A stretch of 39,680 nt of DNA from Selaginella moellendorffii (GCF_000143415.4 NW_003314383.1:394291-433970); one strand, 5' to 3'. Shown: positions 20,785 through 21,677, numbered from the stretch's first letter. A program made the numbers and translations. Notes: generated by a model from the sequence alone, not told the origin.

Positions 20785-21677
20785 TTAGGCCTTGGAGGCC
20801 AGCACAAGTCCGGCGCCGGCGATTCCAACCGTGAGAGCAATGCTTCCTCCATACTTGGTTCCAAACTCAGCAACGTTGGCGATGGAATCGATGGCGCCAT
20901 AGCCCTTTGCATAGATCTCCTTGCCGACGATGTTGTAGATGGCACGAACTGGAGCAAGCAAGGCCTGGTATGCGTATGGGAGGTACTCGGTTGCGCCGAC
21001 GGCATCAAAGATGGAGTCCAGGAACCACTCGCTGTGAGCTGAAGCTAGAACGTTGTTAACCATGATGTTGCCGGAGAGAGTGAGTGGGTTGTAGAGACCC
21101 AGCTTCTCAACCTTTGAGATTTCTGTGGAATGTAAACAAGTGTCAAAAAAGTAAAATGATATCATGAAATTTGTACCCGTGATTTGAGATGATTCCCACA
21201 GAGAATCTCCAACCTTGAGATCCTCAGCTCTCTTGTACACGAGCTTTCCATTGACATCAACAGGAACAAAGTGGCCTGCAGTGAGTTCCAACATGTTTGC
21301 GCCACTGTGCACTTGCACAAACTCCGAAATGGCATCGGCATCCTTGTGGCCGAATGCGTACACATCAGAGAAAAGATTCTTGCCCACTGCAACCTGAGAA
21401 ACACACCTCACCAATTTCTAGAAGCTGCAATGAGGTCAATTCACCTTGTCTCCAACACTGAGCTCCCTCATGAACTTAAATTCCCCAGTGTACATCTGCA
21501 CAGTTGCATCCCCTGTGATAGTTTGGAATTTAAATAGCTATCATGTGGAGAAATATTTCTTGAGAAAGTCCTACCTGGGAAGCATCCAGTGTTATTCTGA
21601 TTATTGGTTGCCACTGCAATGCTTGCAGCAAGGGCAATGAAAGAGTAAAAGAAGAGTAGAGCCTTGGCTTGAGCCAT
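20785..21677 (-). CDS. Secreted Hog-domain protein (Hedgehog-type Hint plus sterol-recognition-like region), copy C, intact, 241 aa
   Basis: Exons 21677-21575, 21512-21445, 21393-21177 and 21122-20785 (726 nt). Signal peptide, then TNNQNNTG, CFPGDATV...MRELSVGDKV, LTAGH (TxxH), GLYNPLTLSGNIMVNNVLAS, LLAPVR (cf. Hedgehog FAPLR) and a hydrophobic C-terminus. Confidence 0.92.

What the first reader, a model, noticed from the sequence alone, without database searches (positions are those of the whole stretch)
20785..21677. Plant Hedgehog-type autoprocessing precursor whose only cargo is an 8-residue peptide (TNNQNNTG)
Seen: a signal peptide (likely cut after AVA, residue 23), then TNNQNNTG, then the G-CFP junction, TxxH motif, Hint C-terminal block, an SRR-like LLAPVR helix and a hydrophobic tail. 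The octapeptide is identical in pseudogene copy B (one synonymous change) and contains an N-glycosylation sequon (NNT). Established: Hedgehog Hog domains cleave at Gly-Cys via a thioester and attach cholesterol to the N-terminal fragment; Hog domains have been reported in some non-animal eukaryotes, mostly without functional data. Inference: this may be a self-maturing sterol- or lipid-conjugated (glyco)peptide system in a land plant, or a reactive-thioester module that tags or captures a nucleophile.
Basis: partly seen in the sequence, partly recalled or inferred. Interest (0 to 1): 0.9.

Follow-up and report, generated by a model that had tools for sequence, protein, structure and literature searches.

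The report
Spikemoss Hog gene with mini-cargo
This is a real, intact spikemoss (Selaginella moellendorffii) gene for a Hedgehog-type self-cleaving domain that carries only an eight-residue peptide, but a sister gene with the same design was published in 2008 and this gene is already annotated, so only what it does is still open.

Summary
Window 20785-21677 (minus strand) is an intact 4-exon gene for a 241-aa protein. It is identical to the annotated S. moellendorffii protein XP_002991723.1 / SELMODRAFT_448530. Its layout is signal peptide, TNNQNNTG, Gly-Cys junction, Hint fold, helical region with the Hedgehog 'APxR' motif, then a C-terminal membrane helix.

- **Family:** Pfam Hint scores 93 bits. 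The AlphaFold model (pLDDT 88) best matches Drosophila Hedgehog-C.
- **Not new as a kind:** Bürglin 2008 lists an EST-derived Selaginella 'pSm Hog' with only TNTS before the Cys. That gene lies on the same scaffold. The scan has also followed up sister genes on other DNA.
- **Active site:** Cys1 and TxxH are kept. The general-base Asp is a His, invariant in 69 relatives. The second catalytic Cys (C143), required in animal Hedgehog, is Ala.
- **Cargo:** it is not fixed. The other haplotype has TNTTG and paralogues have TNTNNS or TNTS. All are Thr/Asn-rich and keep one N-glycosylation sequon.
- **Selection:** the Hog part is under purifying selection (omega 0.12-0.19 at dS 0.83).

Self-cleavage and a sterol or other adduct remain inferred.

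The parts
20785..21677 (-). Whole coding region of Hog gene copy A (4 exons, 241 aa; = XP_002991723.1 / SELMODRAFT_448530)
   Evidence: The spliced translation is identical to P0024.
21609..21677 (-). Signal peptide, residues 1-23 (MAQAK + hydrophobic core + AVA)
   Evidence: Kyte-Doolittle maximum 2.2 over residues 4-24. A-x-A lies before T24 (read). Low-confidence N-terminal helix in the model. The cleavage site is inferred; an alternative after S19 would give a 12-residue cargo.
21585..21608 (-). Cargo TNNQNNTG (residues 24-31) with sequon N28-N29-T30
21582..21584 (-). Cys32, the Hint Cys1 nucleophile at the G|CFP junction
   Evidence: Aligns with Cys1 of Drosophila Hh-C. Cys in 67 of 69 relatives.
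21445..21512 (-). Exon 2 (residues 35-57, start of the Hint fold)
21177..21393 (-). Exon 3 (residues 58-130), holding H73 (21346-21348) and T95-x-x-H98 (21271-21282)
   Evidence: H73 aligns with the His of the D46H mutant 6TYY. His is found in 69 of 69 relatives.
21016..21057 (-). C-terminal Hint block NNVLASAHSEWFLD (residues 152-165); Ala158 sits where Hedgehog has Cys143
   Evidence: At this position the 69 relatives have A 33, S 15, V 7, T 6, C 6, P 2. S157, H159, S160 and D165 are invariant or nearly so.
20935..20973 (-). Adduct/sterol-recognition-like region motif AYQALLAPVRAIY (residues 180-192), which looks like Bürglin's motif K
   Evidence: P187, R189 and Y192 are nearly invariant. 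Helices 174-184 and 186-195 in the model. Bürglin reports motif K in the 'moss' Hogs, in which he counts Selaginella; assigning this stretch to motif K is my reading. Compare the Shh segment.
20797..20847 (-). C-terminal hydrophobic helix (residues 222-238) followed by SKA: probable transmembrane anchor
   Evidence: KD15 maximum 2.27. Helix 213-240 in the model. Moss, liverwort, lycophyte and fern relatives have the same stretch followed by a basic tail.
15229..15964 (-). Copy B, a pseudogene. Exon 1 is intact with the same octapeptide; exon 3 has 2-, 1- and 19-bp deletions; the 3' end is lost
2754..3411 (-). Copy C, a decayed copy. A 24-bp deletion removes exactly the octapeptide (AVA directly before CFP). 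An 89-bp deletion removes the HSEWFLD-to-AP region and shifts the frame

Best explanation
Copy A is a functional member of a Selaginella-specific clade of 'mini-cargo' Hog proteins. Hog means a Hedgehog C-terminal-type Hint domain plus an adduct-recognition region.

Shown:
- The gene is intact and annotated.
- The protein has a signal-peptide-like N-terminus, an 8-residue Thr/Asn-rich peptide with one N-glycosylation sequon, a Gly-Cys junction and a confidently predicted Hedgehog-C-like Hint fold.
- It keeps Cys1 and Thr-x-x-His, and has a His at the general-base position.
- It has a helical region with the conserved A-P-x-R motif and a C-terminal hydrophobic helix.
- The Hog part has been under purifying selection since the split from another short-cargo paralogue.

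Inferred:
- The protein enters the ER and is held in the membrane by its C-terminal helix.
- C32 attacks the G31 carbonyl (N-to-S acyl shift, helped by T95 and H98).
- A nucleophile activated by H73 resolves the thioester. A membrane sterol is the leading candidate and water is the fallback.
- This releases the small, probably N-glycosylated peptide with or without a lipid adduct, and leaves the Hog domain anchored.
- Because C143 is missing, the branched-intermediate step described for animal Hedgehog cannot occur. The linear thioester would have to be attacked directly.
For: - **Gene model and identity:**
- **Family:** Pfam Hint 93 bits.
- **Fold:** AF2 pLDDT 88.4, pTM 0.81. The best Foldseek matches are Drosophila Hh-C 6TYY and 1AT0, TM 0.82-0.83, rmsd 2.5 Å.
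- **Catalytic residues:** alignment. In 69 relatives Cys1 is kept in 67, His at the Asp46 position in 69, Thr/Ser-x-x-His in 69.
- **His as general base:** the D46H/D303H mutant is reported as structurally identical and active (PMC9163320; PMC12054796 Fig. 1C).
- **Selection:** copy A against the short-cargo paralogue P0006 gives dS 0.83, omega 0.19 overall and 0.12 in the Hint part. The gene is intact in both haplotype copies.
- **Transcription of the design:** a sister gene with a TNTS cargo is known from ESTs (PMC2362128 supplement).
- **Cargo seems to matter:** within the clade the cargo varies (Thr/Asn mini-peptides, Pro-rich 40-70 aa, 4-Cys about 30 aa) while the Hog part is conserved. 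A relative carries what looks like a hevein-type Cys-rich cargo (by eye, not run against Pfam).
- **Membrane anchor:** land-plant relatives share the C-terminal hydrophobic stretch plus a basic tail.
- **Weak hint of expression:** 14 small-contig runs from 5 studies hold 0.69-0.78 of the sampled words of 20700-21800. Spliced mRNA without the three introns would give roughly 0.70-0.76 by my count.
Against: - No cleavage, adduct or glycan has been observed for any plant Hog.
- Ala replaces Cys143, and C143A abolishes processing of Sonic Hedgehog in cells (PMC12054796).
- The cargo differs in length and sequence between haplotypes (8 against 5 residues) and between paralogues. The peptide sequence as such is therefore weakly constrained.
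- Sequon retention may follow simply from the Thr/Asn composition.
- Two of the three copies in the window are dead, so the family turns over quickly.
- The signal-peptide cleavage site was not computed with a dedicated predictor.
Confidence: 0.55

Rival explanations
1. The peptide is a short propeptide or leftover, not a product. Self-cleavage by hydrolysis, with no lipid transfer, merely matures a membrane-anchored Hog domain with a free N-terminal Cys. That domain is the working part, for example as a binder or a reactive N-terminal Cys module.
For: - Cargo length is unstable at 8, 5, 6 and 4 residues, and copy C has none.
- The strongest constraint is on the Hint part, omega 0.12.
- A C-terminal TM anchor is conserved on the Hog side, unlike animal Hedgehog-C.
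- Bürglin lists 'Hog only' genes in nematodes.
Against: - No function is known for a free Hog domain in any organism.
- Sister paralogues carry obviously meaningful secreted cargos, both 4-Cys peptides and Pro-rich glycomodules, on near-identical Hog domains.
- Copy C, the one with zero cargo, is dead.
- The general-base His, needed only for the transfer step, is invariant.
Confidence: 0.22
2. The domain no longer processes itself. Without Cys143 it is a catalytically inert Hint fold, kept as a structural or binding module of a type I membrane protein.
For: - Ala sits at the Cys143 position, and only 6 of 69 relatives keep Cys there.
- C143A and C143D block Sonic Hedgehog processing in cells.
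Against: - Cys1, Thr/Ser-x-x-His and the general-base His are kept in 67-69 of 69 relatives. That is hard to explain without catalysis.
- Bürglin noted the same Cys replacement across moss and red-algal Hogs, so it is a lineage trait rather than decay.
- Some inteins splice without a branched intermediate at that position (own knowledge).
Confidence: 0.13
3. Copy A is a young, effectively neutral duplicate on its way to becoming a pseudogene like copies B and C, with no function of its own.
For: - Two of the three copies in the window are broken, and copy B is broken differently in the two haplotypes.
- Several family members are annotated as fragments.
Against: - The reading frame and all splice sites are intact in both haplotype copies, with 3 synonymous and 3 non-synonymous differences plus one in-frame indel.
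- Omega is 0.19 against a paralogue at dS 0.83.
- The word share in small-contig runs fits a spliced transcript.
Confidence: 0.1

Closest known systems
pSm Hog of Selaginella moellendorffii (Bürglin 2008, BMC Genomics 9:127, supplementary table; ESTs DN839649, DN837769), the same gene as P0016
   Same: Same species and same scaffold (GL377687.1). Same architecture: signal peptide, a 4-residue Thr/Asn peptide (TNTS), CFPGD, Hint, HSEWFLD, APxR motif and hydrophobic tail. The closely related sister P0006 is about 72% identical to copy A.
   Different: The cargo is TNTS with a Ser-Cys junction instead of TNNQNNTG with Gly-Cys. It is a different locus, and its close sister P0006 is separated from copy A by dS of about 0.8. 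The paper does not comment on the tiny plant cargo.
Animal Hedgehog C-terminal autoprocessing domain (Drosophila Hh-C, PDB 1AT0; D46H mutant 6TYY; Shh 7E2I)
   Same: Hint fold (TM 0.82-0.83, 28% identity). Gly-Cys-Phe junction, Thr-x-x-His, and a following helical region with an A-P-x-R motif.
   Different: There is no Hedge signalling domain; the cargo is 8 residues. His replaces the general-base Asp46 and Ala replaces Cys143. It has an extra conserved H-S-x-W-x-L-D motif and a C-terminal transmembrane helix. Sterol transfer is untested.
Nematode 'Short-hog' genes (Xiphinema Shog1 and Shog2, Trichinella Xhog3; Bürglin 2008)
   Same: A signal peptide followed by a very short predicted N-terminal peptide of 15, 25 and 34 residues before the Hog domain.
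   Different: They belong to the animal Hog lineage and keep the 'SCY' Cys (sequences). Their cargo is longer than here. They show no Thr/Asn bias and no C-terminal TM helix in the sequences shown.
Long-cargo land-plant Hogs (Physcomitrella pPp Hog, Ceratodon, Marchantia, Diphasiastrum, Adiantum)
   Same: The same Hog subfamily: 42-53% identity, His general base, HSEWFLD, APxR and a C-terminal TM helix.
   Different: They carry N-terminal regions of about 190-250 residues, most of them a conserved region of unknown function. They form a separate, moderately supported group (84/83) from the Selaginella mini-cargo clade, which has 98/97 support.
GPI-anchored arabinogalactan peptides of plants (functional analogy only; own knowledge)
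   Same: Mature backbones of only about 10-13 residues that serve as a glycan carrier tethered to the outer membrane face by a lipid.
   Different: There is no sequence or mechanistic relation. They are lipidated by the GPI transamidase and not by a self-cleaving Hint domain. The analogy is a lead, not a test.

Membership tests
Hog domain (Hedgehog-type Hint + adduct recognition region) | Hint fold closest to Hedgehog-C rather than to inteins | tested here: met
   Pfam PF01079 93 bits against a cut-off of 29.7. Foldseek's top hits are 6TYY and 1AT0 at E=2e-12 and 6e-11, ahead of BIL and intein structures.
Hog domain (Hedgehog-type Hint + adduct recognition region) | Cys1 nucleophile preceded by a small residue (Gly-Cys-Phe junction) | tested here: met
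   G31-C32-F33-P34 aligns with Cys1 of Hh-C. Cys in 67 of 69 relatives. Position -1 is G 29, S 18, A 5.
Hog domain (Hedgehog-type Hint + adduct recognition region) | Thr-x-x-His motif (T69/H72 in Hh-C numbering) | tested here: met
   T95-A-G-H98. Thr/Ser and His in 69 of 69 relatives.
Hog domain (Hedgehog-type Hint + adduct recognition region) | General base Asp46 (Asp303) that activates the sterol hydroxyl | tested here: inconclusive
   The position holds His73, invariant in 69 of 69. The engineered D46H is reported active. Activity of the natural His is untested.
Hog domain (Hedgehog-type Hint + adduct recognition region) | Second catalytic Cys (C143, 'SCY' motif / motif J) forming the branched intermediate | tested here: not met
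   Ala158 aligns with C143. Relatives have A 33, S 15, V 7, T 6, C 6, P 2. Bürglin already noted this replacement in moss and red-algal Hogs.
Hog domain (Hedgehog-type Hint + adduct recognition region) | Sterol/adduct recognition region after the Hint module (motif K) | tested here: met
   AYQALLAPVRAIY with P187, R189 and Y192 nearly invariant. Predicted helices 165-211. Bürglin reports motif K in the 'moss' Hogs, in which he counts Selaginella. The Pfam profile itself matches only up to position 162 of 213.
Hog domain (Hedgehog-type Hint + adduct recognition region) | Autocleavage with transfer of the N-terminal fragment to a sterol | not testable with these tools
   This needs biochemistry. 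No plant Hog has been assayed in the papers searched.
Hedgehog proper / nematode Warthog (the RefSeq name is 'warthog protein 4') | N-terminal Hedge or Wart signalling domain | tested here: not met
   Only 8 residues lie between the signal peptide and Cys1. No Pfam domain other than Hint was found. The RefSeq name reflects Hog-domain similarity only.
Intein / bacterial intein-like domain | C-terminal Asn plus a +1 nucleophile and a C-extein for splicing | tested here: not met
   The Hint block is followed by the HSEWFLD and helical region and a TM helix, not by an extein. Intein and BIL structures score lower than Hh-C.

The most novel reading that the evidence does not exclude
The Selaginella mini-cargo Hog clade makes sterol-esterified glycopeptides. 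The Thr/Asn mini-peptides would carry an N-glycan and the Pro-rich paralogues would carry Hyp-O-glycans. This would be a self-catalysed sterol anchor for small glycomodules on the outer membrane face. It would run parallel to GPI-anchored arabinogalactan peptides, and would use a His general base with no branched Cys143 intermediate.
Probability: 0.2. Interest if true: 0.8.

Novelty: new member of a known kind. Interest (0 to 1): 0.35.

Why it matters
Whether Hog domains outside animals attach sterols, or anything else, has been open since they were found in protists, algae and early land plants. This gene and its sisters offer a very small natural substrate: an 8-residue cargo, one sequon, a natural His general base and no Cys143. 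That would make cleavage and adduct chemistry easy to read by mass spectrometry. It could also show how processing works without the branched intermediate.

As a genome finding it is modest. The gene is annotated, a sister gene with the same design was published in 2008, and the scan has already followed up sister copies.

Tried and rejected
- **Read laying.** Nothing was laid, so splicing and expression of this copy were not verified. All later work used 20700 upward, other parts of the window, or parts of fetched loci that exclude the counterpart.
- **The look-up of encoding contigs for P0024 and P0001.** It returned only the genome scaffolds and no transcript contigs.
- **P0004.** No gene with that product was on record.
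- **Exact spliced-CDS search for P0008.** It found no GT-AG chain, so P0008 was left out of the dN/dS analysis.
- **Bacterial-type promoter/terminator scan.** It is meaningless for a plant gene and was not used.
- **The listing of cluster members on ten environmental short-cargo relatives.** It gave no organism names.
- **Orthologues from other Selaginella species.** No short-cargo orthologue turned up in the protein searches, so constraint on the cargo among orthologues could not be tested.
- **GPI-anchor signal for the tail.** I considered this and think it less likely than a transmembrane anchor. There is no polar spacer, and relatives have a basic cytosolic tail after the same helix. No GPI predictor was available.
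- **A longer N-terminus.** An in-frame stop 27 nt upstream of the ATG argues against it.

Full report
**What is there.**
On the minus strand of the window, an ATG at 21677 opens a gene of four exons: 21677-21575, 21512-21445, 21393-21177 and 21122-20785. The introns are GT-AG and measure 62, 51 and 54 nt. The spliced product has 241 residues. It is identical to database protein P0024, which is S. moellendorffii SELMODRAFT_448530 / XP_002991723.1, named 'warthog protein 4' by RefSeq and 'Hint domain-containing protein' by UniRef. The window is 100% identical to scaffold GL377687.1 at about 405-426 kb. An in-frame TAG 27 nt upstream of the ATG rules out an extension within exon 1.

**Family and fold.**
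- The whole protein scores 93 bits on Pfam Hint PF01079 (cut-off 29.7), matching residues 27-161.
- phmmer against PDB sequences finds Sonic hedgehog (7E2I, 2e-10) and Drosophila Hh-C (6TYY 6e-10, 1AT0 1e-8).
- An AlphaFold2 model built on a 69-sequence alignment has mean pLDDT 88.4 and pTM 0.81, with blocks of 91-98 over residues 31-200.
- Its best Foldseek matches in the PDB are the two Drosophila Hh-C structures (TM by target 0.82-0.83, rmsd 2.5 Å, 28% identity). They rank ahead of BIL domains and inteins.
- After the Hint module the model has helices at 165-170, 174-184, 186-195, 197-211 and 213-240.

**Active site compared with Hedgehog.**
The papers read here define the Hedgehog-C active site as C1, D46, T69, H72 and C143. 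They report that D46H stays active, and that C143A or C143D abolish processing because C143 forms a branched thioester intermediate (PMC9163320; PMC12054796). In this protein:
- C32 = C1, T95 = T69 and H98 = H72.
- H73 sits at D46. In one search it aligns with the His of the D46H crystal form 6TYY.
- A158 sits at C143.

Across 69 members of the subfamily:
- Cys1 is kept in 67.
- His at the D46 position is kept in all 69.
- Thr/Ser-x-x-His is kept in all 69.
- The C143 position is A 33, S 15, V 7, T 6, C 6, P 2.

A further motif, S157-x-H159-S160-x-W162-x-L164-D165, is invariant or nearly so. So are Y181, P187, R189 and Y192 of AYQALLAPVRAIY, which looks like Bürglin's motif K of the sterol/adduct-recognition region. 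The machinery for thioester formation and for general-base activation of a nucleophile is therefore conserved. The branched-intermediate step is not available.

**The tail.**
Residues 222-238 are strongly hydrophobic (KD15 maximum 2.27) and end in SKA. Moss (Ceratodon), liverwort (Marchantia), lycophyte (Diphasiastrum) and fern (Adiantum) relatives have the same 'FGTxxGG + hydrophobic stretch', followed by a Lys/Arg-rich tail of 5-30 residues. I read this as a C-terminal transmembrane anchor. It makes the precursor a type I membrane protein with the Hog domain on the lumenal or outer side. A GPI signal is possible for the Selaginella forms but less likely.

**The cargo.**
Between the predicted signal-peptidase site (AVA|T) and C32 lie eight residues, TNNQNNTG, with one sequon (N28-N29-T30).
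- The counterpart on scaffold GL377679.1 is 96.6% identical over the gene plus upstream DNA. It is syntenic and is probably the other haplotype. It encodes TNTTG, a 9-nt indel plus one change.
- More distant short-cargo paralogues on the window's scaffold encode TNTNNS and TNTS, with a Ser-Cys junction.
- All four versions start with Thr-Asn and keep one N-x-S/T sequon. With such a Thr/Asn/Ser composition, a sequon is expected anyway.
- Other members of the same Selaginella clade carry Pro-rich cargos of about 40-70 residues, or 4-Cys cargos of about 30 residues, on near-identical Hog domains.
- In a maximum-likelihood tree of the Hog parts, the Selaginella mini-cargo genes form one clade (98/97). 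It is separate from the bryophyte, lycophyte and fern-type genes with cargos of about 190-250 residues.
- The top 120 hits of the profile search include ferns, mosses, a liverwort, lycophytes and chlorophyte algae, but no seed plant.

**Selection.**
- Copy A against its haplotype counterpart: 3 synonymous and 3 non-synonymous differences.
- Copy A against the short-cargo paralogue P0006: dS 0.83, dN 0.15, omega 0.19. By region, omega is 0.12 for Hint, 0.21 for the helical region and 0.33 for the tail (Nei-Gojobori).

The short-cargo design is therefore old, and the Hog part has stayed under purifying selection.

**The other copies in the window.**
- Copy B (15229-15964) keeps exon 1 with the same octapeptide (one synonymous change). 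It has 2-, 1- and 19-bp deletions in exon 3 and has lost its 3' end.
- On the other scaffold, copy B is broken in a different place: exon 1 is damaged and exons 3-4 are intact.
- Copy C (2754-3411) has a 24-bp deletion that removes exactly the octapeptide, and an 89-bp frameshifting deletion of the HSEWFLD-to-AP region.

The family is turning over by birth and death.

**What was already known.**
- Bürglin 2008 (PMC2362128) reported Hog domains in S. moellendorffii, S. lepidophylla and Physcomitrella. He noted that the motif-J cysteine is replaced in moss and red-algal Hogs, and that motifs J and K are present.
- His supplementary table gives 'pSm Hog', assembled from ESTs DN839649 and DN837769. 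Its N-terminus is MAHTFFFATSLFAVLASVVLATNTS followed by CFPGD. That is the N-terminus of P0016, a gene on the window's own scaffold. A transcribed Selaginella Hog with a 4-residue cargo has thus been in print since 2008, although the paper does not discuss it.
- The same paper describes nematode 'Short-hog' genes with predicted N-peptides of 15, 25 and 34 residues.
- I found no paper with functional data on any plant Hog.
- The scan itself has already followed up sister genes on other DNA and reached the same verdict. These were s1-361231 (short Hog on the same scaffold), s1-424050 (4-Cys cargo) and s1-388112 (Pro-rich cargo). I checked the 2008 source myself.

**Expression.**
I did not send those letters anywhere afterwards.
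- What remains is indirect. Fourteen runs from five studies have small contig sets (1-57 million letters) and are labelled 'RNA?' by guess. They hold 0.69-0.78 of the sampled 31-mers of 20700-21800. By my count, a spliced mRNA lacking the three introns would hold about 0.70-0.76 and genomic DNA about 1.0.
- This fits expression but does not prove it.

**Verdict.**
The gene is a bona fide Hog precursor with a minimal cargo and a conserved apparatus for thioester formation and nucleophile activation.
- Against the interpretation: the octapeptide is not conserved, the chemistry must differ from Hedgehog's because C143 is absent, and sterol transfer is only an inference.
- It is a new member of a published, annotated family.
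- Its value is as a compact test case for what non-animal Hog domains attach to their cargo.

Noticed in passing
window 20590-20661 (+): A tRNA-Pro (AGG) gene lies about 125 nt downstream of the Hog gene's stop.
   Followed up: no
window 17460-17533 (-): A tRNA-Trp (CCA) gene lies between the DUF7642 gene and the ADH-like gene.
   Followed up: no
window 22139-27573 (+): A PDR-type ABC transporter gene (ABC_tran, ABC2_membrane, PDR_assoc; 1329 aa) lies head-to-head with the Hog gene. The same order PDR - Hog - ADH_N - DUF7642 is found on scaffold GL377679.1.
   Followed up: partly
window 19424-20573 (+) and 16239-17414 (-): A zinc-type alcohol dehydrogenase-like gene (ADH_N) and a DUF7642 gene lie between Hog copies A and B.
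   Followed up: no
window 15229-15964 versus L001:15400-16190: Hog copy B is broken at different places in the two scaffolds. Here exon 3 and the 3' end are damaged. On GL377679.1 exon 1 is damaged while exons 3-4 are intact, and RefSeq models a 193-aa product (P0003) from them. This suggests independent decay after loss of constraint.
   Followed up: partly
window 3330-3345 (-), copy C: A clean 24-bp deletion removes exactly the eight cargo codons. It would place the signal-peptide AVA directly before the catalytic Cys, giving a 'zero-cargo' form. This copy is otherwise dead.
   Followed up: partly
protein P0031 (Logan transcript contig, organism unnamed): A relative of the same Hog subfamily carries what looks like a hevein-type (chitin-binding) Cys-rich domain as its cargo. 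I judged this by eye and did not run it against Pfam.
   Followed up: no
window 1-2000, 12001-14000, 36001-38000: These AT-rich stretches (GC 0.30-0.34) contrast with 0.44-0.51 in the gene-dense middle of the window. I did not examine them.
   Followed up: no
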